Below, piece after piece: positions 1 to 64,000 of a DNA stretch of 64,000 nt. The first letter of the stretch is position 1, and every line of letters starts with the position of its first letter. A program made the translations under genes and the position numbers. The stretch covers positions 372,001 to 436,000 of the forward strand of contig JALMLS010000015.1 of assembly GCA_038496445.1 (NCBI GenBank). The letters are read 5' to 3'. The notes below the pieces were generated by a model. The model did not search any database, had not been told where the DNA came from, and was given only the letters and a program-made list of their open reading frames with translations. The stretch comes from Trichosphaerium sp. ATCC 40318 (taxonomy: Eukaryota; Protista; Tubulinea).

Positions 1-851
1 GATCCTGGCGCTACTGCTTTTCTTAATGCTTTCAAATCGAACTCTAGTTTGAAGAAACTTAACCTTGGTACGTAGAAAAGCCGTAGAGAACCACTATTTT
101 CGTTATTTGCCTTCTTTTAACTTTTTGTGCGCTACGTAAAAAGTCTCCGTTTACGCGCTGTGTATTTTCTAACGAATACTGTTTAGGTTGGAATAAGATC
201 ACACCAGAGATACTAGCAAAGCTCAGACATGTTCTGCGTCCAAACGCTATCAAAAAACGTGCTCTCGCTAAACAACGCGCACAACGTTTAGTAGAAGAGC
301 TTCCTACAAAAGTAACCAAACTTAAACACAATACAAGCGCTTCTTCAAATTTTGTAGACCAGCAAAAATTCCACGTCCAACAGCTCTTACCTGCTTTTAA
401 CGTACCTATTCCAACAGAAGAACTTATGATTACCGAACAGCAACAGTATCCATCAGCGCCAATTTTGAATTTCCCTTTCCTCGACACAACAGAGGAATTT
501 AGGCCTTTTTACGATATGTCAGCAACAGACTTCTCTGGAAACGCAATAAACTCTTCTCTTGGATTTGATATGCTACAAACACCTCAAATATCACAGCAAC
601 AGCAGCCTCAACAGATTTCACAGCTACAACAGCGAATACCGCAGCAAAATCAACAACAAATGATTTCAACACCACAACCAGATCCTGAAGTACAAACAAC
701 ACGTTGCACAGGTTGTAATACGCTTTTAAAGTTTTCGACGGTCGCTCATGCTCATATTATGTGCCCAATGTGCGGTACTGTAATGAGTACAACTGAACTT
801 AGTCAAATGGAGGCTTTACCTGTTTCTGCAGTAATTTTAAGCGAACTGTAA
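1..851 (+). CDS. 3' part of an RNI-like LRR protein with a Q-rich linker and a C-terminal LSD1-type zinc finger (5' truncated by the window)
   Basis: Exon 1-67 (GATAFLNAFKSNSSLKKLNL), GT-AG intron 68-186, then GWNKITPE continues in frame into ORF 426-851 ending CTGCNTLLKF...HIMCPMCGT; AATAAA at 891. Confidence 0.65.
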
Positions 852-1279
852 AAAAGAAAAAAAACCGAAAAGAAAAAAAAAGAAAACCCTAATAAAATTG
901 TAATTATCTCCCCCCATTTCGGCAGTGCTTACCTCTTACAGTATCTATTAGTGAGATCTTATTTATTGTCAGTATTAGACACAGTGTGGAGCATATGGCA
1001 ACGCCTCAGGCTGACAGTTACGGACGCTTTTTTTTTTTTTTCAAATGTTAAGAATTGCAGTTCTTTGCGTATAGCGACATCTCAATCAATTAAAAAATTC
1101 CCTTTTGATGATTATTCATACACCATCAATATAACCCCAATTATATATCTATCCAGTGTAATAGTTGATTAACGCGTTAGCAACAAAAGGAGTAAAATTA
1201 AGTTTTTTATTTATTTTTTTGATTTGACCTTTTTTTTTGTTTTGTTTTTGTCGTTTGACACAGAAACGCTCTTTTCTAT

Positions 1280-1950
1280 TTACACAAATAAACATTTCTT
1301 ACTTCCTTTCTTCTTATGTTTTGGTTTTTCTTGTCTTCGTATTTTTCTCACTGTTTCTTTAAATATCTCTGTAACGTTCCTACCAGTTTTTGCAGAAGTT
1401 AAAAAAAAACTTGCGTTGATTTTATCAGAGAAAGTTTTGGCATCAGTCTCAGGTACTTGTATATTCTCTTCAAGATCACACTTATTCCCAGCTACTACTA
1501 TAGGTATATAATCCTGTTCACAAAGAGCATCCTTTATACGACTATAATGATCTTCTAGTTCATCTAAACTTTGTTTTTCCGTCAAAGAAAAAACTAAAAT
1601 AAAGCCATCCGCCTCTTTGTAATACTAAAACGCAATGTCACGTGCGTAATTCGCCTTTTTTATTTTTTTTAAAAGTAAACTCCCGTACCATAGTCCGCAG
1701 TGCTGAGAACTCTTCCTGCCCTGCAGTGTCGATTATATCCAATAGAGCTATTTGATTATCAACTGATATCTGTTTTCTGTAAGCATCTTCAATTGTAGGA
1801 TCTAAAAAGATCGTTATTCCTTCTACTGTTCTCTAGGAGCTTACCATAGTCTACAACGAAGGCATTCTTTACAAATTTTATAGCAAGAGCCGTTTTACCA
1901 GTACCACCCGCCCCCAATAATATTATAGATACATTATTGATGTTTGACAT
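1280..1950 (-). CDS. Ras-family small GTPase (2 introns)
   Basis: [31 protein letters not shown] motifs, polybasic tail and CAAX CLFV; GT-AG introns restore the frame. Confidence 0.95.
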
Positions 1951-3299
1951 TTGGGAAAAGAGAACAGCTTGCGATGATCAAAATTTCTTTTTAGTTTGAT
2001 GAAATCATGGTGACTAAATCACGTTGTGTTTGCTTTTTTCCCTATAATTCCTTTTGGCGATTTCCAGTCACTCTCTACTTATTATTCTAGGCCACTAAAC
2101 GCGAGATGAACGCGCTTGAGGTTTTTTTGGCTAAACCGACTTGTTTATTCGTTGAAATTGTATAAATACAATAGTAAGCGCTACTATGATGTGCTGTGGT
2201 AGTGTAGCTTCGCGAAAATTGTTTTTTGTTGAACAACGGTTTTTTATTTTCGGCCTTCGCCTAAAAATGTCGTTTCGCGTTTCTTCAGAAATATGAAACA
2301 CTGTTTCAAAAATAGTGAAATTTCTGGTGTACCCAAAAAAAATAGAATATGCGACCTCCTCTTTTCTGGTTGGAAACTAAGATTGGACGACTTGATGTAT
2401 AAAATTAGGTCTTATTTGTGCCTGTGAAAAGAAGGGCTAATATTCGACTAATTGTATTGCTTCAATCTGTGAAACTACTTGCGTTCAAAATTCTTGCTAT
2501 GTGGCTGTTAAATTCGTGGTTTATTCTTGTTGTTGTACAACCGAACAATAAAACTGACGTGGCAGGTACTAATTAAATATTGTCTTCAAGTTAGAATTAA
2601 CAAGACACCAGTGTGATCACATGTGACTATGTGGTAAAAAGAATAAGTGCTTTGTTTATACCGTGACCACAAACGCGCCATCTTCTTCCCCATGTTAGTC
2701 TACCTCTTGTACTAGCAGGTGTACCAATTTAAGCTATGATTGTCATACTAGCCATACTACTGTGCTTGTCTTCACTAAAACGTTATCAGAACAAAGAGTT
2801 ATAATACTGTAGTACATCGTGTAAGTAAATCCAAAACACGTGAATCTCACAAAAGGGATTTTTAGGATTATACTCAAACAAGTCATTGGTGATGTTGCAA
2901 TTGTTATGGTTGTTAGTGGTAGTCGTACGTATACTATGTTTAACTGGTGTGACTTGAACTTTTGTTCTTCACATCAAACTTTTTTGCAGGGATAATTTTC
3001 GTGAACATTTACGAACTACACGTCTGTTTGATGGGAAAAAATCCAAGGGATGAATTGTTGGCCTCTTTTTCCGTTAAGTTCGACACTTTAGTGCTTAAGA
3101 GCTTTAAATTACATAAGACTACGTCCATAGCGTTGTATACATTCGCTTGTGATTAATTACAGCTTTTGATTCGAAATTAGAGATAATACGATCATAAAAT
3201 GTTAGACAAGAGTTTAAAGTTCTTTTCATGGTTATGGTCTATTATTGCTGATGCTGTGCGTGTGTTTAGTAACTTTACATAATCTCATTTTCAATCTAG

Positions 3300-4964: not shown

Positions 4965-7325
4965 TTAATTTTGGATGAAGCGGTTAATATACTTTGCAAT
5001 ATCAAACTTTCTTTTACATCCAGCGTAGTTCATATATCTTATTTTACCGAAAACATCACGTTCAGCCCATGCTCTATCATGTACACCGCCTAAAACAGCA
5101 TTAACAGAAAATCTTCAAATAATTCCTTTTTTTAAGTTTTGCTTCAAACTACTCACCTATAGCCCATGCTATACCAACGTATCCATTAGGATCTCTGCCA
5201 TCTAGTTCATATTTATCATTTAAAATTATAGCAAACTCCATAGCTTGCTCAGGAGATTCAGTCCACTCTAATATCTTCTTTGCCCAGTACATACGCATGA
5301 ACCCATGCATTTTACCTAAAACAACCATCTATAAAAACATGTGAGTATGTATTTCTGTGTTTATTACAAGGCAGTTAAGGGCAGTCAAGTTGTACGTTAG
5401 TTAGCATAAAAAGTATGAACTGGATTGGTCCCCAGTTCAGTCTTTTTCGTTATTGGTTTGCTACTCTAAATCGGGTTGTGGAAACTTGACTGCCTCCAAA
5501 CTTAACCAGGTTGTGCAATTTTATATTCACACTTTTCTATTATTCTTACCTCTGTTTGAGCTGCGTTCCATAAGTCATCATGAGTTTCACTTTTTTCAAG
5601 TTGGTCCAAGCTACAATGAGTTAGAATTCGTTTTTTATTATTTAGGCTCACGTGTATAAATATTGCCTGGTGTCTTCTTTGTGTTCATTTAGTGTTATTG
5701 TCGCCCAGTTAGCTATACCTTCAATGCTGTCGTATTTAGGATTATAGTGACAGTAGTTGTCAGTAAGTTCTAATATGAAATGATCAGAGAAGGAAATACG
5801 TTGAACAGTTTTTATCAAATTGTGTACCTCTCCTCACAATAAGCTCTTCAAGGAAGCTTTCTACAGCTTCTTTATGCTTCTTTTCATACTTTAACGCTTC
5901 AAAAGCTGCACGTTGAGCAGATAGTTGACCAAAGTGAAGATCTTTAAATGAGGAAATCAGCAAACAATACTATTGCAGTAAAGCCGTACAAGGTGACAAG
6001 TTTGATTGTCCGTTAATGTTAGGATCATTGCGATGTAAGTAGAGTTGTATCCTAAACATTCATAAGATTAAAATAGTGTTGTATAGTTCATATAAACAGT
6101 AAACAAGGTACCTCTTTGTTAGAAACTCTTTCAAAGCTTGAAGGCTGTTTTCTTGGCCTGGCTTTATCCATTCAATGTCATGTTCAATAGGAGGCTTAGG
6201 AAGGTACTCAGCCCAATTTGTACCTTTGACAGTCATTAGATAGGGTGTAAATTACTCAAGGTCACGTGGTATTAGCAATACGTGATCAGCAAAAAAAAGA
6301 AAAAAAGAAGAAAAATCCAAAACGCACGAGCTTTTAATTGTTCAGTAAGCCAAGATTCTTTGACTGTTTGCTTTTGAAGTTCTGGAAAATCTGTTAAATA
6401 GTCATCCAATTTTGAGTTAATCTTCTTTCTAATAGTTCTTGCAGCGTATTCTTGTTTAGGAGATGCTACCCAAACAGGTACAACATTATGAGCATCAACC
6501 TAAATAACAGTTGTGAACAGACACAAAAAATCTCGAAAAAGCAAAAAGTACCTCAGTGACTTGACAGTTAATGTCATCTTGTTCTATTGATGCAACTATT
6601 TCATCCTTCCATCCTCTGTTTATACGTAGAGGAGAGTAATCACAAACTAGGTGACCTACTTTATGAGTCTTCACAAAGTCTGGGATGGTTGCTGGCGGTA
6701 ATCCCTTTTTTTGAATTGTTAGAGTTTTACGGACGTTCTGGCTTAATTTTTGGTGTTTTTTATGTACCTTTAGCATAAAGAATGGTATTTCAAGTGTATT
6801 AAGATGCTCTTCGACTTGACGTAAACCGTTCACCATAAACTGTTTAGATTGTTACAAAAAGGCTTTCAATCTGCTTAATTATGTAGTGCCTTGAAGTGAC
6901 GCGCAGTTGCGCGTTGAAATACTGGCATTAGACTGAAAACGACAACTAGTGGTCTTTTTCCTTTAGAAGCTACTTCTTGTGCGTACAGCAACGCCCAATT
7001 ATCCTTGGAGCGCTTTACGGGATATTTAGTATTATTGCAAAGTGTATTTCGCCGCACCTGATCTCTACTCATCCAATACACAACAGGACCTTCATTTTCA
7101 TCCTACAAGAAGATGAACGGATAGTACGAAGGTTCTTTCTTACGATTTTTAAAAGGCTTCTCCTACGCGATAAAATGACATCTGAAGTCGATAATGCACG
7201 CGTATGAACAAGTTTAGCCTACCAACGAATAATTTTAGCTAAAAGCGGACTAAATGTCAACTTGCTTTTTTAGTTCTTGTTTTAGAGGTGGTTGTAGCAC
7301 GCCTCTTTGTAGAAGAACGTAACAT
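4965..7325 (-). CDS. phr: Class II CPD DNA photolyase (multi-exon)
   Basis: [76 protein letters not shown]. Confidence 0.95.
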
Positions 7326-8687: not shown

Positions 8688-8932
8688 AAAAAAATTAATA
8701 AGAAATCCATCTTTTTTGTTATGACTCTTGTTTGGGTTATTGATTGCTTTTTTTCCGTCCTTTTTTGCTTCCGTGGATGTTTGTTTCGAGTACAAGTAAG
8801 CCTAAAGTGTTGTAATAAGCAAGAACAAAGGCAAGTACACGTGTACGGCCATAAAATGTTACAGTTAATACCTTATTTGATGTTAAGTCACTTACAAATC
8901 TAACGTCCATAAACCTGAGTATACCAATTAAA

Positions 8933-18495: not shown

Positions 18496-18883
18496 GCCGT
18501 TTCTTATTTTTTCAACCGAAGAAAACTCATGTTTTTTCATTCCAATACAATCACCGACATGGAGAAAAGTTTACGGAGAAAACCAACTGCTAGTTGACCG
18601 GACAAGTCAAATGGTAAGTGTAAGTCTTTGAAAATGTGTTTGATCAGCTTCCACGTGTTGTCATCGAGTTCGTCTTTAACGGGTTTTTTATCTGTAACAA
18701 CTGGCCATTCGAGTGTGTAGGTTTCTACCCTTTTTGGTGCGCAGCAATTAAATGACTGCCACATAACCCTAAAGTACAAAATCTCATAGATGTATGGAGC
18801 CAAAATACATGCATTTTACTATTTGAGAGTGGGTTTTAAAGTCTCTGACTAAACAACACAAATTGAAGGATAAGACAAACTAT

Positions 18884-19882: not shown

Positions 19883-22174
19883 ATGGGTAGCGAAAGCGAA
19901 ATTCCACCAGGTTTCAGCTATTCTCGGTCAGATGAAGAGGGAGATTTGTATAATCTTACGAACTTTACATTCGTAGTCAATAAGGATCGTAAAAAGGTTT
20001 CGTTGGAGCAATTAGAGGAACTTTACAGAAATAAACATAAAGTATTCGGTAAAGGCACCCTTGCGCCACAAATAGGCCAAACAACGCTTCCTGGAACAGG
20101 TACAGAATATTTAGAGCCTTTACACATTTATATTGCCTTAAAGTGCTCAATTGTAACCAATAGCGCGTCATGACATCCATCTAACAGAAGTTTTGGAATG
20201 GAGCGTTGAATTTGGGCCAAAACTAGCAGAATGCGCTATTTGGATCAGAACTGTATTTGGATGGTAAGTAAGAGCTCTGTGCAATTATTACGAAAGTCTC
20301 CGACATTTTTTCCGATTAGGTACCGATTAATAAGACCTGATAAAACATATGAAAGGGTTTACAGACCTCTGTGGAATAAAGTATTCGTTATGATGCACTT
20401 GTATATTACAGCAAAATCTCAGATTGGTTTGCCTGAAGTACTACATAAGGTTAGTCCATAGAGTAACTCATATCTTCAACACGTGTCATTTCTTCTATTT
20501 TTGACATTTGACTCAATTGCAATGTGTCAAAATTATTAGAATTCTTAAGGTTATTTTTCCCCTTTTTTTTTGTGTTGTACTACTGGTAGTACGCTATAAT
20601 TTTGTATGTTGGGAATTTATTTATTGTGTGCTAGTTACAACATAGGCATACTTCAATATGTAGAGAAGATGTATTCCGTTATTGGACGTTTATTGAAGGG
20701 CATTTGAATAATCCAAATAAGTCTTCATCAGAAAAACGAATATTTCAACAACTCGTACGCTGTCACTGTCTATTTATTTATCCAGTACTATGTTCATAAT
20801 ATTCTTAGAAAAGAGCAGCAAGGTCATGGCAAAAGCAAAATAAGGGTATGTTTAACGCACGTAGATTTATGTTAGGTTTCGAAAGGTTTTTCTTTCAGAT
20901 TGCATCAAGATTGTCACATTTTGGGCCGTCTTTTTGGCTTTCACCGACAAAATATTTTGATAGTCTTCGTATTGCCGTGAGTTAGTTGCTAATGTTTTGT
21001 ATTTTGATTTAGATAAAAAAACAGCAATGATTCATTATCCGCTTTATTTGGACGAAAGTCAAGCAAAACCTATTACGTTAACACAAGGGAAGCCTGCTAT
21101 TGTTGTTGCAAAAAAATCTACATTGACCAGTAAAAAGAGAAAGAGAGATAATACACCAGTACCAAAGTCTAAGGCTCCACCGAAAAAAAAAAAGAAAAAG
21201 CTTGAAAAGCAAGAAATTGATGATGACAAACCATATTTCGCAAAGTTGGTTAAAAATGCTTCCATGCAAACAAGGAATAAGCGTGTTTCTTCATCAACAC
21301 GAAAAGGTACAACTTATCCGACCCACGTGTTTATCACGTGATATCGAAAAAAAAAAAGGAAAAAATTTTATTGACTTTCTTCTTTTTTGGAATAGCTGTT
21401 ACTGCTGATATATTGGCACGTGTTAATCCAAAGCTATTCAACAAAGATAAAAAACTAGAGTGTTGGAGATGTGGACTCACCTTTCAACATTTATTGGGTG
21501 ATGGCTTGTATAAGTTTATTGAACACCTACATATGCACAAAGGCTTACTCTCTGGTTCCCTATACGAAGACCAACGCAAGGTAACAACATCCTTTATTCA
21601 CAATCATTGCATCTATCTTACTTTTGTTCTAGAGGTTGAGGTTCACAAGTGTTTTGAACCAAATGCGGATAAGGAACATTATTGAGAGTGTCTTATCTAC
21701 CACAGCTGATCAACATATGATTGCTGAATTTTACGCTAAACCTATTGTTGAAAAAGAAACAGTTGAGTATAAACCTTTTAGACTTGGTTCATTTCCATCA
21801 AAAGGTAGTGGTATACGAAAAGTGATACAGGTTCGTTGCAATATTTTTTGCAAATCTCACCTAGTGCAAACCAAGCAAAACGAAAATCCATTGATTATTT
21901 ATTATGTGTAACAGTAGCATACAATGCACAAAACCTTGCTACAAGACCTTTTTACTGAGCAATTACGTAGGATAGAATTGATGCTGGCGAAATTGTTGTT
22001 AAAAAGAAGAGCGAGTTGAACGAATCAACTACCTCTTTAGTTAATGATGGTGGCGATGTCCCACAAGCTAATATAGAAACTAACAAAGACAAGACAGAAC
22101 AAACGTTCCCTTTATTTGATGACGTTGTTGAAACATCATCACCTGACCTCGAGTTTCTAGACTTTGGCGAATAA
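19883..22174 (+). CDS. DNMT1-RFTS (RFD) domain protein with a basic NLS region and a C2H2-like zinc finger; no methyltransferase domain seen
   Basis: Spliced LTNFTF...VSLEQL...GKGTL...LTEVLEWSVEFG...IWIRTVFGWYRLIRPDKTYERVY fits the RFD pattern; CWRC...HLHMH finger near 21460-21540. Confidence 0.7.
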
Positions 22175-22930: not shown

Positions 22931-23725
22931 ATGACACAACAAGATAAGAATATTTCTATAGTTGTTTTTGGTAGCGGTGGTACTGGTAAAACAGCTATTA
23001 CAGTAAAGTTTGTAAATAATCACTTCGTAGTCGATTATGGTACGCTAAAAACGAAAATAAACCAAACGAAATGTCTTTTTTCTTTGTTCTAAAATTTTTT
23101 TCGAAAAGATCCAACCATTGAAGACGGTTATAGAAAATTGTTCTCCGTTGATGACAAGGTTGTTCTACTTGATATCCTTGATACAGCTGGTGAATCTGAG
23201 TTCTCTGCGTTAAGAAATATGGTACGGAGATAAAGATCTTTTATATCACAATTTTTTTGAAGAATTTCTAAACTTTAAGTTTTTTTCTGTTTTCTGCGTT
23301 TCCCTCCACCTTACACTTTTCGAAACGGTATGAAATATATTTCTGACGCTACCTAGTATATTTCCGCAGCGAAAGGGTTCGTTCTCGTCTACGATATAAC
23401 GCAAAAAAGCACTCTTGATGAACTATCCCAGATTGCAAGAGAAATAAGAGATATATCACGTGATAATGTTGCAATGGTTGTTGCTGGTAATAAGACTGAT
23501 ATTGAAGGCCATAGACAAACTACAAAAAGAGAGGGAGAAATATTTTCGAAAAGTATAAAGGCTTCTTTCTTTGAGACGTCTGCAAAGACTGGTGATAATA
23601 TTGATGCTCTATTTATTGACTTGGTCCGAAAGATAAGAAGACAAGAGAAGAAGGAATCAAAGACATGTCTTTGTATGCAAAAGAATAAGAAGAAATTGCG
23701 AAGCAAGAAATGTAAGGTCCTGTGA
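22931..23725 (+). CDS. Ras-family small GTPase, Q61E variant (2 introns)
   Basis: [40 protein letters not shown]. Confidence 0.95.
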
Positions 23726-26207: not shown

Positions 26208-27675
26208 ATGACACACGCCACGCCTCTAGCAATATTCATTGCCTTGTTGGCTTTTGTTTATTGCGGTACAACGCCAAACTGGACGCCAACGTATGACATG
26301 CAAATGTCAACGATATTTATGCCTTGTAATGACTCCGGCTTCTTCGACGCCGAGTTTGCAGCGCAGTTCGGTATTGCTGATTTCGATTGGAGTAATGCAA
26401 AGCAGTTATGGGCTAACGCAAAACCAATGAACTGCGAAGAGCTATTGGTAGAGCAAGTGAAACGTGTAAAGGCTGTGAATCCTAAAACAAAAGTTTTCGT
26501 GTACAGAAATCTCGTCAAAGGTAACCCACTTAATTTCTTCCTGTATTAACGCACGTGACAGCGCTTCCTTGGTATACGAATGTTCGCACGAAAATAACAG
26601 ACCCTGATTACGCTGGGTGGTTTTTAAAATTCTCTGGTAAAAATAATTATCACGTGCCTCAATGCGACAAAAACTATGATCCGCCTCTTTGTACAGAGTT
26701 TTATCACGATCAAGATCAAACACCTCAACACCCTAAAGGAGATGGTTCTTGTACAGACCCATGCGATTGTGGAGGCGTTCCATGCGGTGAGTACCTTTGG
26801 GACCATCGTAATACGACGTTAACGGATTATTTGATAAATCACGTGATTCTGGGCGAAACAGGCAAGTGCTGTTTGTCAGCGTTGTAGTGTTAACAAAACG
26901 ATTTTAGGCCTTGGGAATCCTCTAATATCTGGTTTTTACCTTGACGATTCCTGGACAGATAACCCTACACAAAAAGAAGGATTACAAGCTGCTCCAAGAT
27001 TCTGCGCTCGCTCCCAATATGGTATTCCCGTTTTTCCGTTTTATTTTTTGTCTCTTTCTGACTCTTTGTAGGTGGGCCCACTGAAGAAGACTACTATTGC
27101 ACCGCAGATATGGGTCTCATCCAGAACGACACTACAGCAATTTACACACACTGGAAAGCCAATATTGCCAAAGTACATGCTGCTATTGCTGCAAAAGGAG
27201 GATGGAGTTGGCAACAATTCACTGATTTTTCAACACCAAACAAAGAAAAATGCGCCCTGACATTCAGATCTGAATGTAATAAAGACTCCCTAGCGTACAC
27301 CAATGCACTATACTATACGGTACAGCAACTTCAGACTATATAAGATACGCTAAATTGTTGTTTTAGTACACAACAAAAGGTAGAGAAGTTTCTCCTCTCC
27401 TTCAGTTTAAAGAAGACTTGGCAGGGTTTCTACTTGTTAGAGGACCTTATGCATGGCTTGGATATGAATGGAGCGGTTGTTCTACAGGTTCAGATCCACC
27501 AGGCGCTAAAGGCAAACCGTACTTGTTTCCTGATGAATTGAAGGTTGATTACGGAACACCAACAGAGGTTTGTCATGAGACATCCACTAACAGTGGTGTA
27601 TTTGTTCGCAAATGGACCAAAGCTACTGTAGAGTTCGATTGTAATACATACACCGGTAGTATTACCATGAACTAA
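26208..27675 (+). CDS. Secreted putative glycoside hydrolase (GHL15-like TIM barrel)
   Basis: Signal peptide; FDWSNAK, KAVNPKTKVFVYRN, LWDHRN, GFYLDD, GVFVRKWTKATVEFDCN; 4 introns including one GC-AG. Confidence 0.65.
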
Positions 27676-30545: not shown

Positions 30546-31069
30546 ATACCATGTTTTTTTGCTTCGTGTGAACGAAGTGAACTATTGTTTAGTGTAAACT
30601 TCTATCATCAAAGTACCACCGCTACTGTCAGGAAGATACCAATGAGCAAAAGAAATCACGTGCTACGTGACAAAAACTACTAAACTCACTAAAACAGCAC
30701 ATCTATTTTCTCGTAACGGCGCACGTGACAACCAAACGGTGTTACTGCTTGTTTACAATATCGAAATAAAGTACTCAAATAACTATGTAGCTCGAGCGCT
30801 TACGCGCTAGTTTACACATTACAGTTCTTGGTGGACGAGAGATGGACAATTACACACAAAAAAAACTTTATAAAACCGATACAGTAGTTTCCTTCACATA
30901 AAGAGGTGGTATAGTACAAGGTAATGGACGTGACGCATCGTGCAAGAAAAAGGATAGTGTTTACTTGGTAAAAACTCCTTCCATAAAGTACGTACGCAGT
31001 GAGAATTAGGCTAAAGTAAGCATTAGGCGAGGAGATAACAGGTTGTAGTCATTTAAAAATAAAAAAGAC

Positions 31070-37071: not shown

Positions 37072-37169
37072 TTATAACACTTCAAACACTTTGGTGCTTT
37101 TGGGTAGAAAAATCACAGTCAGTCAAATTAATACATAAAACTAGCGTGTCTGCGGCTCAGTTACCAATC
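37072..37169. promoter_or_regulatory. Putative bidirectional promoter (98 bp between divergent start codons)
   Basis: NCS-like ATG at 37071 (-) and ArfGAP ATG at 37170 (+). Confidence 0.6.
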
Positions 37170-47535: not shown

Positions 47536-48729
47536 ATGGGCCAGGTTAACAAAGCTGTCAGCGTATTGGGTGGTAGCACAGAACAAGGATATAAGGACGG
47601 AACCCTCCAAAATGCTAAATTCTCATTAGTATCTGGGTTATGTTATGTAAACGAAAGAACTGTGAGCTGTGACGCGTTTTAAACAATATTTACGAATTTT
47701 TAGCTTCTTGCGGTTGATAACCGACCAAATAACGTTATTCGCTCTATAGACACTACAGCGAGTATAGTTACTACGCTTTGTGGCACAGCAGGTGAAAAAG
47801 GGATGAAAGACGGAGAGTTTGGAAGCGAAAAGACATTACTTCAAAATCCGACTACAGCGAGTCTTCTTGGTGATGATGTGTACTTTATTGATGCTAATAA
47901 TATCAGAAAAATATCCTTTAAGGTTAGAAATATTGATAGAGTACAGTTGCAAACACAGTCTCACGTGATTTTTCAAAAATAGGAAAAAAAAGTATCAACT
48001 GTTTGTAATATGAATGGGTACATGGTTCATGGAGTTACTGCTGCTAGTGATAAGCTGTTATTATGTTGTTATGATTGTATACTTATTGTGGATCTTGGAG
48101 GAAATATACTAAAAACAATTGGAACACCTGGTGATGCAGGGTATCAAGATCGTGAGCCCCGAAAAAAATTGTTCACAAAATATTGATAGTTGGCTTGTTT
48201 AGGGAGTGGACAAGGGACTTCGAAGTTTAATGGTGCTTGCAACGCCGCTGTATCTAGTGATGGTAAATGTGCGTATGTATGTGATTATAACAACAAGGCT
48301 TTACGTTATATTCACCTTGAAAGCGGCATGGTAAGAACAGTTGACAAAAGATTTAATATGCCCAAAGTTGCATGCTATTGTGCAGGTACCCTCCACTTCT
48401 TTTGGAAAATATAGTCGTTGATTGTTCAAATGAACTATTTTAATAACCTTAGAACAAAGAGTACACGTTTTTAAGAACGAACATGTTCGAGCTTAACTTC
48501 TTTTTTTTTTTCTTCTTTTTTTTTATAGTCGCGAACTAAGTGTTACCTCTTAGGTGTTCTGTACATTGCAGATTTTGGGGATGGTATAAAGAAGGTTGTT
48601 GATGGTAGTGTTCAACCGTTTATAAGTATCCCTAAGAAACCTCTGGCTATGTGCTCTGATGGAAAGCAGTATTTGTATGTATGGGACAGTGATAAAAAAC
48701 TTTGTAAAATAAATGTTATGGAGGTTTAA
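47536..48729 (+). CDS. NHL-repeat beta-propeller protein
   Basis: GYKDGTLQNAKF, VTTLCGTAGEKGMKDG, GDAGYQD, YVCDYNNKALR, LYIADFG. Confidence 0.8.
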
Positions 48730-50458: not shown

Positions 50459-52234
50459 ATGACGTATAGACGTATTGTTATACTAATGCTATTGTGTTTA
50501 TTTTCAAAAGCACTTGTTTTTGAACAAAATGGCCGTAAGAACATTGTAGTATTCTCCACGTGTGCATAACATTTGTATAGTAACCTTTAACTCGCCAAAC
50601 ATATCGTGGTTATCAAAAACCTCTTGGAATAGTACAGCTGTAACAGGTACGTATAGTGCGTTCGCCACGTGCGTTTTAAAAAAAAACACTTTTAGATAAT
50701 TTTATTTTTTATGTTCTATCAGATTAACTTGATAATAGGAGATCTTGTGGCGTATGATAAGTTTATATCATTAGATAAGAATAACTCAAGTGACAAGATC
50801 GTATTTCTAACAATACAGATGTATAAATGGGGCTACCAAGTCGCGGAAGCGCGGAGAAAAGGAGCTATTGGTATTATTATTTATGATTCTCCTTACAGTA
50901 CGTGTTTTTTTATCCGTACAATCTTGTCCACTGATTGCGATTAGTGACAGGAGGGGCGCTAGAATTCTTCAGAATGAATTGGAATCAAGCACCATCAGAA
51001 CTTGAGGGTATTCCTACCGTCGAAGTCGGATTTGATTTTTTGGACTACTTCAACAAGCTGAACGACTCAACAGCTGTAAAACTGTTTCCTAATGGTTCGT
51101 GGTCAGTCTTTTTACAGGTTCTTACGGAGTTTTAATTACTTAGATAATAATCCATGGAGGCCAGTCAAGTCAATCGGATTTGTATGTAAACGTAGAGCTT
51201 GTTCATAAAAACAAAATTGGGTTTTTACACTTACAAATAGATTGTTTTCTCTGTTGCTTATGGAGCCGTGGCACTCACTTGTATTTTATTGGCTTGTTTT
51301 AAATTATATCTCATAAAACACGAAGTTGGATGTACTTTCAGTATTTCCCAAACATGTCTGGTGCTGGAGATTATCGCAAATACAGGTAAGTTTCTATCAC
51401 CAAATACTCTAAAACTCAACTGTTTAGGACGATTGTTTTATGTTACTATTGATCCAATGTACAGTCGCAGAATATTTTCAAAACTCACAGCTGCTTGTTT
51501 TGATACAGGGCTTGTGTCACTATCACTTGCAACTTCTCTATTCATTGCATTTTATTGGTAAGTGTTATAGTAGCTCACTGTTGTTTAACACCAAAAAAGG
51601 TTGGAGATAATCCGTGCAATCAAATCATTCAAAGATACAGGTGGTAAATTGAAAAGGTTCAAGATACCTTGTATTATATTAGTTGCAATTGTTTGCTCGT
51701 TGGAGTTTGGAGTATCAATTGTGCGTGGTGTCACATATTTTCCAATAGCTTTTATGTCAGTGTATATAATTTTTACATTGATGGGTATATCCATTGCTCT
51801 CTACCTTATTGTTATGGGTGTAATTGTATTAAAGCATATAAATCAAAGTAATGCAAGGTCTAAATACATCAAAAAAATTCAACGTGTACGCTCATCACAG
51901 TAGTTTTTTCTGTTCGTACAATTTTCTTACTTTATTTACAAACATGCACTCATACTTTGTTCAGGTTACATTGCAGATTATGGTTAGTGGTGTTTTTACA
52001 ATACTACTAGCGATAATTGCTTGTTGCACTCTGTGGACATTTTTTAGAAGACCCATTGCGTATTTCGTGTTATGGTCTTTGTATTGGTTTTTTCTTTTTG
52101 GAATTAGCTTACTACAGATAACAGCTATCTACAAAACGCGCAAACAACCTTCTCAATCAAAGGAAGCAACACCAAGTATTAATACAGTCCGAAGAACAAT
52201 GGTCAGTAATTCAAGAAATGCAATGACATCATAA
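50459..52234 (+). CDS. Signal peptide + PA (protease-associated) domain + 7TM protein, copy 1
   Basis: PA motif QVAEARRKGAIGIIIYD...IPTVEVG, then seven hydrophobic segments; exon structure shared with copy 2. Confidence 0.75.
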
Positions 52235-52455
52235 TTGTTTAACGCAATGACCATTGACTTGTAAAAAAATAAATTGCATAAGCCTATTGACGCCCCTTCT
52301 TCTAAATCCTTGTAGTACTTCGTCCTACAAACTGAATCAGAACGATGATACGCCTCTTCGAAATGGGTGCGAAATCACGTGATTAAGTGGTTTTTTATCA
52401 TTTTTAGGAAGTTTCTCCTTATTTCTCGTGTAAATTAGTTACTCGCACCGCTAGA

Positions 52456-53715: not shown

Positions 53716-54032
53716 TTACGAGCGTTATTACCTTGTATAAGCAAGCGACGAGTTAAGGGTACTATGGTCGATTTGAGCTGATTTTCAAACCCATTTTTAT
53801 TACTGTTAACAGAACGGTAATTTTTCTAAAACACGTGACCTGAAAAGTACGCCAATGGTCTAAAATCAGCAAATTATAGTATGTGTACATAGTCTAACTA
53901 GTAAAATTAGAGGACGTACCCTCAAATAAACCCTTTTTTTGTATCCCAATAATTACCTGCCTTAAAACAAAAAAAAACGAACACAGAATCTTCGTACTAA
54001 AACTCTTCAAAGCGACAGTTAGCGCCATCATT

Positions 54033-55828
54033 ATGATAATTATAAATGCTCTGGGTGTATTTACTGCTATGTCTTGGGTTGTATTAACAAGTTCGCTAGT
54101 TGTTCACGATAATAACGGAAAGAACAGTACGATGGATAGCGACATAGTTAACTACGTATTTCTCATCCTATCTTAGTAACTTTTAATTCGCCAAATATCT
54201 CTTGGCTTTCAAAACAAATATGGAATGGTACTGATGTTACTGGTACGCGTAGTTGAGTCATCACGTGATCATATCGTTACGTTTTTTAAGGGTTTTATTT
54301 CGCATCATTCGTTGTCCAATTTAACTCGATTTTAGGAGAGCTTGTACCGTTGGATAGTAGTAACTACACTAACAAGATTGTGTATTTAACAACAGATAAT
54401 TACAAGTGGGGTTATCAAATCGCGGAAGCTAGGAGAAAAGGTGCTATTGGTATAGCTATCCATGACAAGTCATTTGGTAAATATTGTCAATTAGATCTTT
54501 TTGGACACGTGATTAATTGTGAATAGTGACTGCAGGAAAAATGGAATTCTTCAGAATAAATTGGAATCAAGCGCCATCAGAACTTGAAGGTATTCCTGCT
54601 GTTGAAGTCGGAGATGATTTTGTGAATTATTTTACAGATCAACAACGCCTAAATGTTACCTTGTTCCCCAACGGTATGTGGTTCAAGAAGAGATTATTTC
54701 TTCAACTAGTTCTAACACATATTTTTAGACAACAATCCATGGAGACCAATCAACGAAGTTGGGTTTGTATGATCACAAGCTGTGTATTCTTGCTAATTAT
54801 ATTGGAGGTTGTTTTCTCGACTTTTTATGGTGTAGTGGCACTTGTTTGTATTTCTTTGGCTGCTCTCAAACTATACTATGTCACAACAGGAGTAGGGTGT
54901 ATATTTAGTATATCTCAAACATGTCTTGTGCTAGAGATTATTGCAAATACAGGTAAAGACTATCACAATAAATTCCAATTGCTCACGCTCTATCTGTTTA
55001 GGACGATTATTTTATGTGACTGTTGATCCAATGTATAGTCGTAGAATACTCTCACAGTTTACAGCCACTTTTTTCGATACAGGGCTTGTATCACTGTCAC
55101 TTGCGACTACTCTATTCATCGCGTTTTATTGGTACGTGATTTTTTTAAAATAAGAATTGTTTTGACTGATCAAAAGAAAGGTTGGAGGTTATCAGCGCAA
55201 TTAAGGCCCTCAAAGAGAGAGGAGGTAAACTTAAAAAGTTTCTACTGCCTTGTATTATATTGGTCATAATTGTTGTTCTTGTGGAGCTGAGTGTATCGCT
55301 TGGACGAGGGCTCGCAGAAATATCGTTAACTTTTGGTGTAATGATGTTCGTGTTTATGTTGATCGGTATTGCTATTGCTCTATACCTCTTGATAATGGGA
55401 GGAATAGTATTAAAGCATATAAGAGAAACCAATGCAAACTCTGCTATTGTCATAAGAATTCAATGTGTACGTTCACGTGATAGAAAATTCGTGTTATTTT
55501 ACTTTTTTTTGAAACTCAAACTAGTTTTTCTTATACCTTTCTTACGTTACTCATCTTTCCTTCTTCTGTTTAGATTACAATACAACTTATGATGAGTGGC
55601 GTCTTTACAATACTCTTGGTTATAGTTGTATTTAGCTCCTTATGGCCATTCTTTCGAAGACCTGTTACCTACTTTGTAGTGTGGTCTTTGTACTGGTTCT
55701 TTCTTTTTGGAATCAGCCTTCTACAAATAACAGCTATTCACAAAAAACGCGATCCGCCATCTTCAGTAGAAATGACCCAAACTACTTCAGCTCCAGGAAT
55801 AATTGAGACAACTATGAACACCCAATAA
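54033..55828 (+). CDS. Signal peptide + PA domain + 7TM protein, copy 2
   Basis: QIAEARRKGAIGIAIHD...IPAVEVG and a 7TM region highly similar to copy 1; same intron positions. Confidence 0.75.
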
Positions 55829-59825: not shown

Positions 59826-60204
59826 ACTATCCCTTCAGTATATGTGTCACTCACCGGGTAAATCCAAGCGACACTTCAACAATCACAACTTACTTATTAC
59901 AACAACTTAACGCACTTTTGGTTGTGATGTCCGTTACAAGTTTTGTAGCACCTCACATGTTGCTTGAATAGAATAAAATAAAAGAAAACATAATGCATAG
60001 GATAGCGGGGTGCAATATTTGTCTACAAGCAATGTTTTACAACTACAATCGTGTGCGCAAAGATTTCTTTTTTTTCTTCTTTTTTTTTTACCCATTGAAA
60101 AAAAATAATATTCACGTCTTCAGGATGATCATCAAAAGAATTCAAGAGAGGTACCTCTATGAATACAATACCTCCCATTATTAATCCATTATCCAAAAAA
60201 TAAA

Positions 60205-61993
60205 TTATGATTGCTCAATAAGCTTCACACGCTGTTTGTGTGTCTGAGATGCATCCGCCGATAATTTAGCATATTTCTTTGCTATCTCCTCTAACTCTTT
60301 CTGTTTTAAAGCCTCATAGACATCTGTCTTCTCAACAAGCCATTTATCCAACGCTTTACGTGACTCTGACTTGCGCACCTGTAATAAAAAATAACAATTA
60401 ATCAAAGCTATTAATGCTTTCGAGGTGATAACCAAGGAGCCTGCGTACCTCCTCAAGCTTTCCATCACGCAGTTCTTCAAGCTCCTTCAATGACATTTTA
60501 CCGAACTAAAGAAGGAAGTTAACAACAGTTTAAAAGATCTATTATGGAGCACTCCGTCACAAAGGCTTTCGCTAAAGTAGTAAAAAAAAAATGTTACGTA
60601 CAAAGTTCCTTTTTTCTTCTTCTTCTCGCTGCTTAAAGTGTTGCATGAACGATGGTACAAATCCTGCTTTAGAGTTGTCCGAAATAACAATACTATCGCT
60701 GTGATCTAACATGTTTTAGTATTTATTGAAAATAATAAAGTACAAAACAAAACTTATTTGTACCTCTACCCTCTCCATTGACTACCATTGTACCATATCC
60801 TCCACCAATTGCTCCAAGATCTAATGAATTTGATGGTGACTTGGCCATCCAGTTATCAAGATCTGCGTCTTTGGTTTGTGTTAGTACAGAGTATTTTGTT
60901 AAAAACAACAAAATAAAACAAATAAATTCTCAAATAATTTCTCACGTCGTTCAAGACAAAACAGAAATGCACTATTATAAACCATGGTTTTCCTGTGACA
61001 TTTTAGACATAAAATAACAAACAGACAGCGCAGTAATGGCACATAATTGGCAGTAAAAAATTAAATTCAAAAAAGACAAAATAAAAAACAAAACGCACCA
61101 GTTGTAACACGCGGAGAATCGCTTTGAGTGCTATCGCTAACACTACCAATACTCCTAGGTGGTGTAGAATCGCTGGTGCTTTCCGAAGGCGTTTCTCTAC
61201 CCTTATTCTTCTTACTACGCTTCTTCTTGCCTTTTGCTCCTTTTTTTTTGCCTGATTTTGTTTTCTTTGGTGGTGCTACAGTAGCTCCAGTCAATGCACC
61301 GGTCTTGCAGAAGATAGTAAGCAACATGCGCAAGAAAGAGACATCTTTTAGGAGTAAAACAAAAAAAAATCGGTCTTGTCAGTTTTATTAATTGCCAAAC
61401 GCTAGTACTGCAACTAGACCGCGAACAGAGATACGAACGCCAAAAATCGACGCACCTTTTGCTTCATAATCTTATAAATCCATTCTTGCCTTGTCTCATC
61501 ATCTGCGCACAAATGGTGCGTGCGAGAGACACCATTGGTCTTAGTTTCAACAAAGAAAATCTTTTTTGTTCTAAATCGGTAGCCGTTACATAATCATTAC
61601 TAAATAACTATGTCTTACTTATCGCGCGTATTGGTTTCGCTCACATCTGCTATTTCGCTGAGTAGGATAAATCCTTTAGGTTCTTTTCCCTTTTTGCATG
61701 TTAGTATTTTGGACAGCCCCGTAACCATGCATTAACGCTAGAATTGACGCACCTTACGATCAACATAGTAATTCACTCGGTCATTAACTAACACTGTCCA
61801 GAATGTGGTCCATCGGGGCGCGAGTGTACCGCCTTGCTGCCTCACTGATAAAAAACCAGATTTAAGGGACTGAAAAGTAATTAATAATCTATCAAAAATA
61901 CAGCACACGGATAATAATATATACATCAGCGACACGTTTTAAGCGCAACGCGAATTACAAAACTAAAAAATATCGAATAGCGGTGTGCACCAT
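60205..61993 (-). CDS. PH-domain protein with an Mst/Hippo-like linker and a SARAH-like coiled coil
   Basis: ATG micro-exon, intron 61990-61870, PH (KSGFL...WTTFWTVL...PKGFILL...RQEWI); tail YGTMVVN, FVPSFMQHFK, MSLKELEE...KELEEIAKKYAK. Confidence 0.7.
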
Positions 61994-62118
61994 GTCGGAT
62001 GTCTCAATGTCAACAACAAGGGTTGAATGGTCCTCTCGTGTTCTATCTATGGCCTATAAGCAAAGTCTCAATTTCGTCGCGATTAGTCAATCGTTTCGTC
62101 TGCACACAGCAGTACGCC

Positions 62119-63189
62119 ATGGCGCAAAAATGGGCAGATACAGTGTATTCAGGATGGTATAACCAAGATTCAAAACGACAAGAACTTACATGCCAATTAA
62201 AGTTTAAATCAGGTGCGCAGTCGTACTTCCACATTAATGCGATTGTATAAGCTGGTTTTTTTTTTCTGAACAGGATTATTGTGCAGGAAATATTGAAGGC
62301 GAGGGCCATAGCGACGCTGGTTTATTTAATATAGCAGGTGAATACAACACTGCCGCGCCGTTTGATTTCAAGTTCGTTAAAAGTTTCTTTGGTACAGTGG
62401 TTTGCGTCAAAACACAAAATGATTGTAGTGTAGGTGGTGCAGGAGTAGATTTTAAAGGATTTGTGGCCGCTGATGGCACATTATTTGGCACTTACACAGG
62501 ACCAAATTCAGGAGGTGACTTTAACCTAAAACCAAAACAAAAGACTGCTGGTACGCGTTTTTTACCTTTCGTTTGCTTGTGCCGAATTTAAAACTGATAG
62601 TTTTAACGTTAAAGTTGCCAATCGTTTCCTATTTGGAGGTTAATTCTTAAGTAGAGGACTTCAAAAAAGAAGCAGAAGCTGCCATAGCAAAGATTAAAGG
62701 CCAGCTACTTTCAATGGGCTTTCCTAACTTTTTGTGTGATCAAGCACTTGAGGTTAATAAAGACCTTGATTCTGCGCTTGCATGGATTACAAACGTTACG
62801 TCGACAGGAACAGATGGTACGTTGCCTATATTTGTGTTACACTAGTACTTTTCGCAAACAACCAGCGAGTCGCCTACAATACAATTACTTGTACAGGAGA
62901 GTCTTTTTGTACAAGTTTCAGTTGTAACCCTAAAAACCTCATTACAATACTAGGCTTTCTATTTTTGTACTGAACACTTTTTTTAACCTTAACCCTGTTA
63001 ATAGTCGGAGAACCACCGGAAGCACTTGTTAATCAGATTACGTCGATGGGTTTTACAGTTGAGCAAGCTAAAAACGCTTTACGCATAAATGTACGATAGA
63101 AAAAGAGTGGGTATGTATTAATGCGTTAAAAGGGCAATTCTGTTGAGCTGGCGGTTAACCATATTTTTTCTGAAAGTTTTCAAAGCTGA
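62119..63189 (+). CDS. Protein with a beta-rich N-terminal domain and two C-terminal UBA domains
   Basis: QLLSMGFPNFLCDQAL...DSALAWI and QITSMGFTVEQAKNAL...VELAVNHI. Confidence 0.8.
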
Positions 63190-63422
63190 AAAAGCTTGTG
63201 AATTCGCCCACGTGTATTGTAAATAAACTAGCGTTGTATTTGCGACGTCTGAACGCAACAAAACGAATACGTGAACTTTTTTTACCTCAATTTTTGAAAG
63301 TTGTTACGTGAGGATTAACGTTGACTGTTTGTTTTCTGAACGAATTATGCACACAAGAAATTTAAATACAGTCACCCAAACGACAAGTAAACACATCATC
63401 ACCTCACCAACCTCACACGCTT

Positions 63423-64000
63423 ATGAACGGCTATAAAAGAAAGCGCAAGCGACGTCGTGAAACACAAAACCTACCCAGAACGAAGAAAACCCGCATTCAA
63501 AACACGATGCAAGAGCACAGTACGTGGTAGTTCTGAGTCACTTTTTGTTTTACATGAAACTTCCGTTTTCTTTGCATTACCCTATTCTGACACTTTGTAG
63601 TCACCAAGTGGAAAATCGACGAGCCAGAGAGCTCTAAGCTGTCTATATCAGATTACGGCATCTCCTTTAGCTCAATTGGGCCGTACAGTTTGGAACTTAG
63701 CATTGGCGCCAATATCGCCGCTAAAAGCTGCAACGGTTCAAGACCTTTCAAACAGTTCGTTTTCGAGCCTTCGACGGGGAAACCCATCGACGGTCACGCT
63801 TTCACCCCTTCGATGACTTACAAACACAACACCATTGTACCCACTACCAAGCCACTACCCTGTCTATACATGTTGGTAAACCACTGACGATTTTGTACTA
63901 AACAAGCTGTAAATAACAAGAATTTCTCTACATTCCTAATTCTGCCTAAGTTGTCCGAAAACAAACCACTGAGAAATAGTAACTGTGGTAACAAACAACA
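63423..64000 (+). CDS. 5' part of an unknown protein with a basic NLS-like N-terminus (3' truncated)
   Basis: MNGYKRKRKRRRE exon, GT-AG intron 63520-63600, open exon through ~63875. Confidence 0.5.

What the first reader, a model, noticed from the sequence alone, without database searches (positions are those of the whole stretch)
1..64000. CACGTG palindrome about 10-fold enriched and concentrated in short introns
Seen: a hand count gives about 51 CACGTG sites against about 5-6 expected at ~33% GC, while the same-composition palindrome GTGCAC occurs only about 7 times. About half lie in introns (e.g. 1639, 2837, 4385, 6263, 9750, 10992, 12346, 12607, 12804, 15317, 16268, 16895, 20480, 21324, 21335, 26552, 42290, 46348, 47962, 49665, 50666, 54262, 54506, 55474, 57080), usually one per intron and often as TCACGTG or TCACGTGA; most others are intergenic. 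Established: (T)CACGTG(A) is the E-box/CDEI site of bHLH-ZIP factors (Cbf1, USF, TFEB), and CpG methylation blocks binding by several such factors. Inference: a genome-wide system in which introns carry protein-binding punctuation marks (nucleosome phasing, methylation protection or splice definition) rather than ordinary promoter elements.
Basis: partly seen in the sequence, partly recalled or inferred. Interest (0 to 1): 0.8.

Follow-up and report, generated by a model that had tools for sequence, protein, structure and literature searches.

The report
CACGTG palindrome crowding introns genome-wide
In this intron-rich protist genome the six-letter palindrome CACGTG is by far the most over-used DNA word, about 13 times too common in introns and 4-5 times in intergenic DNA; it most likely marks where a paired DNA-binding protein sits, not a splicing signal.

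Summary
The window has 53 CACGTG sites against about 10 expected (dinucleotide shuffles 9.9, largest 21; Markov order 3, 11.4; order 4, 25.6). The control palindrome GTGCAC has 8. On my own ab initio gene model, 25-26 sites lie inside introns and 4 straddle an intron edge (2.0 expected, 13x). Another 15-16 are intergenic or unannotated (3.3 expected, 4.5x) and 8 are exonic (3.9 expected). The whole-window excess is 5-6x, not 10x.

The sites are not a repeat family, and single-mismatch variants are not enriched. Only about 18% of introns carry a site, and its position inside introns is uniform, so it is not a splicing signal or per-intron "punctuation". There is a modest 5' bias, a peak 200-350 nt upstream of start codons, one site conserved between diverged paralogous introns, and a weak (A)T...A(T) flank preference.

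My best reading (about 0.45) is a double-stranded-DNA site for an abundant dimeric E-box or G-box factor, used at unusually high density. The main rival (about 0.25) is a cyanobacterial-HIP1-like palindrome kept up by methylation or repair.

The scan had already noted the same excess on other pieces of this genome: 59 notes, none of which I checked.

The parts
1..64000 (.). All 53 CACGTG sites. Start coordinates: 1639 2837 4385 5649 6263 8838 9152 9750 10397 10992 12346 12607 12804 14648 15317 15430 16268 16895 17351 18652 20480 21324 21335 21417 22596 22678 23457 25939 26552 26651 26840 27941 29166 30657 30722 33466 38439 41439 42290 44204 46349 47962 48962 49665 50557 50666 52376 53832 54262 54506 55474 57080 63209
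   Evidence: One search gives the list and the shuffle expectation. One search assigns each site to a class on the ab initio gene model.
50666..50671 (+). Site in intron 2 of 7TM paralog 1. It starts 20 nt into the intron and is conserved with 54262.
   Evidence: alignment A1, columns 229-234.
54262..54267 (+). Site in intron 2 of 7TM paralog 2. It also starts 20 nt into the intron, in otherwise diverged intron sequence.
50557..50562 (+). Site in the 46-nt intron 1 of paralog 1. Paralog 2 has TACGTA at the aligned position.
54506..54511 (+). Site in the 50-nt intron 3 of paralog 2. It is absent from paralog 1.
55474..55479 (+). Site 8 nt into the last intron of paralog 2 (GTACGTTCACGTG). Paralog 1 has no CACGTG in this intron; the alignment there is gapped, with TCACAG nearby.
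52376..52381 (+). Site 80 nt upstream of the MORN-gene ATG and 72 nt upstream of the 5' end of the RNA contig. It is either promoter-proximal or inside a possible 41-nt 5'-UTR intron (GTGCGA...TTTTTAG).
53832..53837 (+). Site inside the unspliced 3' UTR of the MORN transcript and 201 nt upstream of the next gene's ATG. It is retained in mature RNA.
   Evidence: RNA contig 52525-53943 is contiguous across the site with 0 differences.
21324..21340 (+). Two sites 11 bp apart in one 89-nt intron.
5649..5654 (-). Site straddling an exon-intron junction (CAC|GTGAGC...TTCTAAC...TGTAG, 41-nt intron) in the photolyase-like gene.
26552..26557 (+). Site between the branch-point-like ATTAAC and the 3' splice site of a 41-nt intron.
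47962..47967 (+). Site in the middle of a 42-nt intron.
23457..23462 (+). Exonic site (TCA CGT GAT, Ser-Arg-Asp) in a 366-nt open frame with a high coding score.
30657..30727 (.). Two sites 65 bp apart between convergent genes, that is in 3' intergenic DNA.

Best explanation
CACGTG is a cis-element read on double-stranded DNA by a symmetric dimeric protein. The most likely binder is a class-B bHLH(-ZIP) factor of the USF/Cbf1/TFE/Max kind, or a G-box bZIP. The protein would be abundant enough to act as a general chromatin or transcription factor rather than a pathway-specific one. Sites are kept by selection wherever sequence is free to hold them. In this compact, intron-dense genome that mainly means introns (most of all the 5'-proximal ones) and the 200-350 nt upstream of start codons.

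Shown: the excess, its strict specificity for the perfect palindrome, its location by sequence class, the absence of any fixed relation to splice signals, and the retention of one site in diverged paralogous introns.

Inferred: that a protein binds it, which protein that is, and what binding does. My guess is opening or organising chromatin and boosting transcription from promoter-proximal and intronic positions.
For: - The top over-represented word is a perfect palindrome, while its nine single-mismatch neighbour classes sit at 0.47-1.15 of expectation. This fits strict recognition by a symmetric dimer on dsDNA.
- The excess is present in non-transcribed or promoter DNA as well as in introns. 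Intergenic sites number 15 against 3.3 expected, with a peak 200-350 nt upstream of ATGs (6 sites, 2.1/kb). Nine of 16 intergenic sites lie in the 80-350 nt zone, P = 0.02.
- Intronic density is 3.2/kb within 600 nt of the ATG against 1.5/kb beyond, P = 0.03. This is the pattern expected of a promoter-proximal or first-intron factor site.
- The half-site flanks favour A at -2 (45%) and T at -1 (41%), giving roughly ATCACGTGAT. From my own knowledge, a 5' T is the preference of the USF/TFE/Cbf1 group.
- The site is kept at the same offset (starting at intron base 20) in intron 2 of two paralogs whose exons are only about 78% identical and whose introns have otherwise diverged.
- Sites are not copies of a repeat: the best flank match is 21 of 40, against 20 of 40 in a random control.
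- Scan notes report bHLH genes in this genome, one read as CACGTG-binding. This is an unchecked lead, not evidence.
Against: - The density is about ten times that of known general regulatory factor sites. It is 0.83/kb overall and about 2/kb in introns. In Fusarium promoters the top conserved motif CACGTGA occurs 264 times in 3.4 Mb (PMC2853525).
- The excess persists at more than 10x expectation far into gene bodies and in 3' intergenic DNA.
- It shows no significant gene-to-gene clumping (P = 0.14). A regulon would clump.
- It is also about 3x enriched inside predicted coding sequence against a synonymous-codon shuffle (9 observed, 2.9 expected, P = 0.002). That points to a force acting on DNA everywhere.
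- No binding protein, occupancy or chromatin data were available.
- Introns are about 3x more enriched than intergenic DNA, which a promoter factor does not by itself explain.
Confidence: 0.45

Rival explanations
1. A eukaryotic counterpart of the cyanobacterial highly iterated palindrome HIP1. CACGTG would be the target of a sequence-specific DNA methyltransferase and/or a short-patch mismatch repair activity, or another DNA-level self-mark. A repair or conversion bias, or selection for the mark itself, would push its frequency up everywhere in the genome. The effect would be strongest where sequence is unconstrained (introns, intergenic DNA) and weakest in exons.
For: - The density (1 per 1.2 kb) and the near-uniform scatter across genes (dispersion P = 0.14 and 0.23) resemble HIP1 more than any transcription-factor motif.
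- There is absolute strictness for the perfect palindrome, as with restriction-modification-type enzymes.
- Enrichment is also seen at synonymous positions of predicted coding sequence (9 observed, 2.9 expected, P = 0.002).
- The motif contains a CpG, and genes show a 5'-to-3' CpG o/e decline suggestive of gene-body methylation.
- A scan note reports a Vsr-like nuclease next to a C5 DNA methyltransferase elsewhere in this genome (unchecked lead).
- HIP1 and its orphan methyltransferases are described in PMC4390886 (listed).
Against: - The deamination product CATGTG/CACATG is not depleted in noncoding DNA (11 observed, 12.4 expected). A Vsr-type drive should deplete it.
- Noncoding CpG o/e is about 1.0.
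- The 2-3x higher density in introns than in intergenic DNA, the upstream peak and the 5' bias are not predicted by a uniform drive.
- Two or three of the 'exonic' sites may be misannotated introns.
- No such system is known in eukaryotes (one search found none).
Confidence: 0.25
2. An RNA-level intronic element: CACGUG(AU) in the pre-mRNA would be bound by an RNA-binding protein that aids recognition, or regulates retention, of a subset of short introns.
For: - The highest enrichment is in introns (13x), including minimal 41-50 nt introns (1.8/kb).
- In the sense orientation of 26 intronic sites the downstream flank is A at +1 (15/26) and T at +2 (15/26). The mirror position -1 is T in only 10/26, which equals the background T content of 39%. 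This is a weak hint of strand asymmetry.
- Several 'intergenic' sites look as if they sit in unannotated UTR introns (2837, 49665, 52376).
Against: - The core is a perfect palindrome, which only 1.6% of hexamers are. An RNA motif has no reason to be one.
- There is no preferred distance to the 5' splice site, branch point or 3' splice site (KS p = 0.63).
- About 82% of introns lack it.
- It is also enriched in intergenic DNA between convergent genes and in exons.
- One site stays in a mature 3' UTR.
- The asymmetry rests on 26 sites and does not survive multiple-test correction.
Confidence: 0.1
3. A by-product with no function of its own: remnants of a dispersed repeat or transposon ends, a side effect of the unusual GTACGT 5' splice site, a compositional effect of CpG-rich gene 5' ends, or an assembly artefact.
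For: - The 5' splice site consensus contains ACGT, and GGTACG is itself strongly over-represented.
- CpG o/e is highest in 5' introns (1.36).
Against: - Flanks of the 53 sites are unrelated and no tandem arrays are involved.
- CACGTG cannot overlap GTACGT in register, and ACGTGA without the leading C is not enriched (22 of 65 occurrences, about the number expected).
- Other ACGT-core palindromes are at or near expectation (AACGTT 23 vs 30, GACGTC 7 vs 6).
- The CpG gradient is 1.5x, not 13x.
- One site is confirmed in an independent RNA contig.
Confidence: 0.05

Closest known systems
E-box / CDEI / G-box CACGTG sites of class-B bHLH(-ZIP) factors (Cbf1, Pho4, USF, TFE/MITF, Myc-Max) and plant G-box bZIPs
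   Same: The palindromic core is identical. There is a mild preference for T immediately 5' of the core. Sites occur upstream of start codons and in 5'-proximal introns. One site is conserved in otherwise diverged noncoding DNA.
   Different: The density is roughly ten times higher than reported for such sites. In Fusarium promoters CACGTGA occurs 264 times in 3.4 Mb (PMC2853525), against 0.8/kb here and about 2/kb in introns. Sites spread through whole gene bodies, 3' intergenic DNA and even coding sequence, and there is no evident gene set. No binder has been shown.
HIP1 (GCGATCGC), the highly iterated palindrome of cyanobacteria, with its orphan methyltransferases (PMC4390886)
   Same: Both are a short perfect palindrome at about 1 per kb, many-fold above expectation, scattered fairly evenly. 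Variants are not enriched, and the palindrome is also found inside coding sequence.
   Different: This is a eukaryote and the palindrome is a hexamer. It is mostly excluded from exons and concentrated in introns, with a 5' and upstream bias. No cognate methyltransferase or methylation is shown, and the expected depletion of the deamination product is not seen.
General regulatory factor sites of yeasts (Reb1, Abf1, Rap1, Cbf1) that set nucleosome-depleted regions
   Same: Both are a short specific motif present at a large share of genes irrespective of function. Here 16 of 25 genes have a site between -350 and +650 of the ATG.
   Different: Yeast sites are promoter-restricted and flanked by poly(dA:dT). 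Here most sites are intronic, and no poly(dA:dT) association was found.
Intronic splicing signals and enhancers (5' splice site, branch point, polypyrimidine tract, intronic splicing enhancers)
   Same: The highest density is in introns.
   Different: There is no fixed position, the motif is present in only about 18% of introns, and it is a palindrome that is also enriched outside transcripts.

Membership tests
Class-B E-box (bHLH/bHLH-ZIP binding site) | Core hexamer CACGTG | tested here: met
   There are 53 exact sites, and single-mismatch variants are not enriched.
Class-B E-box (bHLH/bHLH-ZIP binding site) | Flank preference of the USF/TFE/Cbf1 subgroup (T 5' of the core, symmetric) | tested here: inconclusive
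   T at -1 occurs in 41% of 106 half-sites against about 32-39% background, and A at -2 in 45%. TCACGTGA occurs 9 times against 5.3 expected. The preference is mild and, in introns, not clearly symmetric.
Class-B E-box (bHLH/bHLH-ZIP binding site) | A cognate bHLH with the His-Glu-Arg basic-region residues encoded in the genome | not testable with these tools
   Only this window is readable. Three unchecked scan notes mention bHLH genes elsewhere in the genome. The window's proteins are not in the protein collection.
Class-B E-box (bHLH/bHLH-ZIP binding site) | Protein occupancy at the sites, and an effect on transcription | not testable with these tools
   No ChIP, DAP, ATAC or reporter data were available.
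Class-B E-box (bHLH/bHLH-ZIP binding site) | Promoter-proximal or 5'-intronic placement | tested here: inconclusive
   There is an upstream peak at 200-350 nt (P = 0.02) and a 2.1x higher intronic density in the first 600 nt (P = 0.03). The excess nevertheless stays above 10x throughout genes and in 3' DNA.
Highly iterated palindrome (HIP-like) | Perfect palindrome many-fold over expectation across the genome | tested here: met
   53 observed against about 10 expected in this window. 59 scan notes report the same on other pieces of the genome (unchecked).
Highly iterated palindrome (HIP-like) | Enriched inside coding sequence as well | tested here: inconclusive
   9 sites in predicted spliced coding sequence against 2.9 under synonymous-codon shuffling (P = 0.002). 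The gene model is ab initio, and 2-3 of these sites may be intronic.
Highly iterated palindrome (HIP-like) | Cognate DNA methyltransferase and methylated sites | not testable with these tools
   No modification data were available. One unchecked scan note reports a C5 methyltransferase and Vsr-like nuclease pair.
Highly iterated palindrome (HIP-like) | Signature of a repair drive: depletion of the one-transition precursor CATGTG/CACATG | tested here: not met
   11 observed against 12.4 (order 1) or 11.1 (order 3) expected in noncoding DNA. Power is low.
Spliceosomal intron signal | Fixed distance to a splice site or branch point, and presence in most introns | tested here: not met
   Sites lie 8-60 nt from the 5' splice site and 4-94 nt from the 3' splice site. 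Relative position is uniform (KS p = 0.63). About 18% of 147 predicted introns carry a site.
Dispersed repeat / MITE remnant | Sequence similarity extending beyond the core | tested here: not met
   The best pairwise flank identity is 21/40 against 20/40 in random controls.

The most novel reading that the evidence does not exclude
CACGTG is a eukaryotic 'highly iterated palindrome'. It would be a genome-wide DNA mark, written or maintained by a sequence-specific methyltransferase and short-patch repair pair (possibly of bacterial origin) or by an architectural dimer. It would accumulate in all unconstrained DNA and label transcribed host DNA, independently of gene-specific regulation. That would make it the first HIP-like system outside cyanobacteria.
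Probability: 0.2. Interest if true: 0.85.

Novelty: new variant of a known kind. Interest (0 to 1): 0.55.

Why it matters
If a single hexamer is kept at about 2 per kb of intron across a whole genome, some strong force is responsible. Either selection or a transmission bias is shaping noncoding DNA in a poorly sampled protist lineage.

If the force is a DNA-binding factor, this would be an extreme case of intron-resident general regulatory sites. It would offer a tractable system for asking what such sites do inside genes.

If the force is a methylation or repair drive, it would be the first eukaryotic parallel to cyanobacterial HIP1. It would also make the long-open question of how such palindromes are maintained testable in a second, independent system.

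Either way, the motif is a practical marker for gene finding and for telling host DNA from foreign DNA in this genome.

Tried and rejected
1. Gene finding. The first three ab initio attempts over-predicted introns because the splice-site scores gave every GT..AG pair a free bonus. This was fixed. The final model still merged two genes, which I corrected by hand from the RNA contig.

2. RNA evidence. The only RNA run found (X1, contigs) covered just the MORN gene in the 5.5 kb I laid. It gave one confirmed intron, which contains no CACGTG site.

3. More DNA of the same or a related genome through proteins.
- The MORN protein found only about 30% identical bacterial-type proteins and no self hit.
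- The photolyase exon found only 40-residue matches.
- No related loci could therefore be examined.

4. Literature. Seven searches and reading within three papers found no description of an intronic or genome-wide CACGTG excess in any amoebozoan, heterolobosean or other protist.

5. Readings tested and rejected.
- Splicing signal: no positional preference.
- Repeat family.
- Poly(dA:dT) or nucleosome-depleted architecture.
- Per-gene clustering or a regulon.
- General excess of ACGT-core or CpG words.
- Vsr-type depletion of CATGTG.

6. Spliced proteins were not sent to Pfam because they have no reference. Single exons were used instead.

Full report
**Observation.** The window (64 kb, 36.7% GC) holds 53 exact CACGTG sites. 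Dinucleotide-preserving shuffles give a mean of 9.9 (sd 3.2, largest 21). Markov expectations are 9.4 (order 1), 9.5 (order 2), 11.4 (order 3) and 25.6 (order 4; that figure is built from the motif's own pentamers). The same-composition palindrome GTGCAC occurs 8 times against about 12 expected. CACGTG is the most over-represented hexamer apart from poly-A under every background tested, and it stands out among the 64 palindromic hexamers in noncoding DNA (41 against 5.3; next is TACGTA, 22 against 10.7). The whole-window excess is 5-6x rather than 10x.

**Gene model.** No annotation or close relative is available, so I wrote a small Viterbi gene finder: a 3-periodic Markov coding model, splice-site matrices and explicit intron lengths, with iterative training. 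After I corrected a scoring flaw, it converged on 24 gene segments, 147 introns (median 70 nt), 30.8 kb of exon, 14.2 kb of intron and 19.0 kb of the rest, with no overlap between strands.

- Its gene ends coincide with spans that first readers noted independently (50459, 55828, 60205).
- Its strands and extents agree with Pfam hits on single exons: photolyase, septin-like GTPase, protein kinase, inositol polyphosphate kinase, MFS, LRR and two MORN_2 proteins.
- One RNA contig confirms the MORN transcript (52448-52476 joined to 52525-53943; a 48-nt GT..AG intron). It also showed that the model had wrongly merged this gene with its upstream neighbour. I corrected that by hand.
- The model is approximate, especially for introns longer than 150 nt and for UTRs.

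**Where the sites are.**

| Class | Length | Sites | Expected (order 1) | Excess | Sites per kb |
|---|---|---|---|---|---|
| Introns | 14.2 kb | 26 inside, plus 4 straddling an edge | 2.0 | 13x | 1.8-2.1 |
| Intergenic or unannotated | 19.0 kb | 15-16 | 3.3 | 4.5x | 0.8 |
| Exons | 30.8 kb | 8 | 3.9 | 2x | 0.26 |

- The intron excess over intergenic DNA is significant (P = 0.002-0.012). It is probably understated, because some 'intergenic' sites look like unannotated short introns (2837, 49665, 52376).
- Against a shuffle that keeps the proteins and the codon usage, predicted coding sequence holds 9 sites where 2.9 are expected (P = 0.002). Two or three of these may be intronic.

**What it is not.**

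- Not a repeat. Flanks of the 53 sites match no better than random positions (21/40 against 20/40), and tandem repeats are irrelevant.
- Not a general ACGT-core or CpG effect. AACGTT, GACGTC and the nine classes of single-mismatch neighbours are at 0.5-1.15 of expectation. ACGTGA is enriched only when preceded by C. Noncoding CpG o/e is 1.04.
- Not a splicing signal. Only about 18% of introns have a site. Its relative position in introns of 130 nt or less is uniform (KS p = 0.63), with offsets of 8-60 nt from the 5' splice site and 4-94 nt from the 3' splice site. It can lie before, beside or after the branch-point-like YTAAY. Density is similar in all intron length classes, including 35-55 nt introns.
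- Not tied to poly(dA:dT) tracts.
- Not significantly clumped by gene (P = 0.14) or by 4-kb bin (P = 0.23).

**Positive features.**

- Intergenic sites peak 200-350 nt upstream of predicted start codons (6 sites, 2.1/kb). Nine of 16 lie 80-350 nt upstream (P = 0.02).
- Intronic sites are 3.2/kb within 600 nt of the start codon and 1.5/kb beyond (P = 0.03). They remain more than 10x over expectation to the 3' ends, and in DNA between convergent genes.
- Part of the 5' bias parallels a general CpG gradient: intron CpG o/e falls from 1.36 to 0.80 and exon CpG o/e from 0.85 to 0.57, going 5' to 3'.
- Taking both orientations of every site, the flanks favour A at -2 (45%) and T at -1 (41%), roughly ATCACGTGAT.
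- Oriented by transcription, 26 intronic sites show A at +1 (15) and T at +2 (15) but only background T at -1 (10). This is a weak asymmetry that I cannot evaluate with so few sites.
- The tandem 7TM paralogs (exons about 78% identical, introns largely diverged) give a small conservation test. The site in intron 2 is kept at exactly the same offset, starting at intron base 20 (50666 and 54262). The site at 50557 faces TACGTA in the other copy. Sites 54506 and 55474 have no counterpart. So there is both retention and turnover.
- Site 53832 lies in the unspliced 3' UTR of the MORN mRNA, and 52376 lies 72 nt upstream of that contig's 5' end.

**Interpretation.** A perfect palindrome as the single most enriched word, strictly specific and present in transcribed and untranscribed noncoding DNA alike, points to recognition on double-stranded DNA by a symmetric dimer.

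- *Best reading: an E-box or G-box site for an abundant bHLH(-ZIP) or bZIP factor (0.45).* This is the economical reading. It fits the upstream peak, the 5'-intron bias, the T flank and the conserved paralogous site. What does not fit a normal transcription factor is the density (about ten times that of fungal CACGTGA promoter sites, PMC2853525), the persistence through gene bodies and 3' DNA, the lack of gene specificity, and the excess at synonymous positions.
- *Main rival: a HIP1-like palindrome maintained by methylation or repair, or serving as a DNA mark (0.25).* Those same misfitting features are what it would show (PMC4390886). Against it, the deamination product CATGTG is not depleted, and introns exceed intergenic DNA.
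- *RNA-level element (0.10).* I hold this as unlikely for the reasons given under 'What it is not'.
- *By-product or artefact (0.05).*
- The remaining 0.15 covers explanations I have not thought of.

It is partly supported. The E-box identity is plausible. 'Punctuation of introns', 'splice definition' and 'rather than promoter elements' are not supported by position, frequency or distribution.

**Context and limits.**

- 59 notes of this scan report the same excess on other pieces of the genome. Others mention bHLH genes and a C5 methyltransferase/Vsr-like nuclease pair. These are unchecked leads.
- A note on mitochondrial single-G insertion editing matches what is published for the heterolobosean amoeba 'BB2' (PMC5421314). 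The only RNA run found also belongs to a two-organism study from 2015. The organism's identity remains a guess.
- No protein of the window is in the protein collection and no close relative was found. Conservation across species, the proteome and methylation could therefore not be examined.
- All numbers by sequence class rest on my own gene model of one 64-kb window.

Noticed in passing
whole window; e.g. 50647, 54243, 55132, 55467: The 5' splice site consensus appears to be G|GTACGT, with C at +4 instead of the usual A. GGTACG occurs 37 times against 10.9 expected and ACGTAC 57 against 22.6. GTACGT is the commonest donor in the ab initio introns (25 of 147), followed by GTATGT, GTGCGT and GTACGC. 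The 3' ends are mostly TAG. This implies a matching change in U1 snRNA or relaxed pairing.
   Followed up: partly
all predicted genes: CpG o/e declines from 5' to 3' along genes. Exons fall from 0.85 (first 600 nt) to 0.57 (beyond 2.4 kb), and introns from 1.36 to 0.80. This is compatible with gene-body CpG methylation that spares the 5' ends, and it agrees with scan note s1-372775.
   Followed up: partly
17896-19744 (-) and 52456-53715 (+): There are two genes for bacterial-type MORN_2 (YwqK-like) repeat proteins. The second is expressed and has a confirmed 48-nt intron (52477-52524). The best database matches are bacterial proteins at about 30% identity, so an old horizontal acquisition is possible.
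   Followed up: partly
window:50557 versus window:54147-54152 (alignment A1, columns 119-126): Where paralog 1 has CACGTG, paralog 2 has TACGTA. This is a symmetric double change from one palindrome to another.
   Followed up: no
noncoding DNA of the window: ACGCGT (the MluI cell-cycle-box-like palindrome) occurs 13 times against 5.4 expected. AAATTT, TTTAAA and TTATAA are strongly under-represented.
   Followed up: no
4965-6836 (-), 7403-10750 (+), 31006-33192 (-), 34378-36481 (-), 57827-59825 (-): Exon-level Pfam hits identify a photolyase/cryptochrome-like gene, a septin-like GTPase with LRR, a protein kinase, an inositol polyphosphate kinase and an MFS transporter. Neither protein queried (the MORN protein and the photolyase exon) has a close relative in the public protein collections searched, so the lineage is poorly sampled.
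   Followed up: partly
31006-41073 and 57827-63099: Two stretches have many introns (2.9 kb and 1.7 kb of intron) but no intronic CACGTG at all. The overall dispersion test is not significant, but gene-specific absence deserves a genome-wide look.
   Followed up: partly
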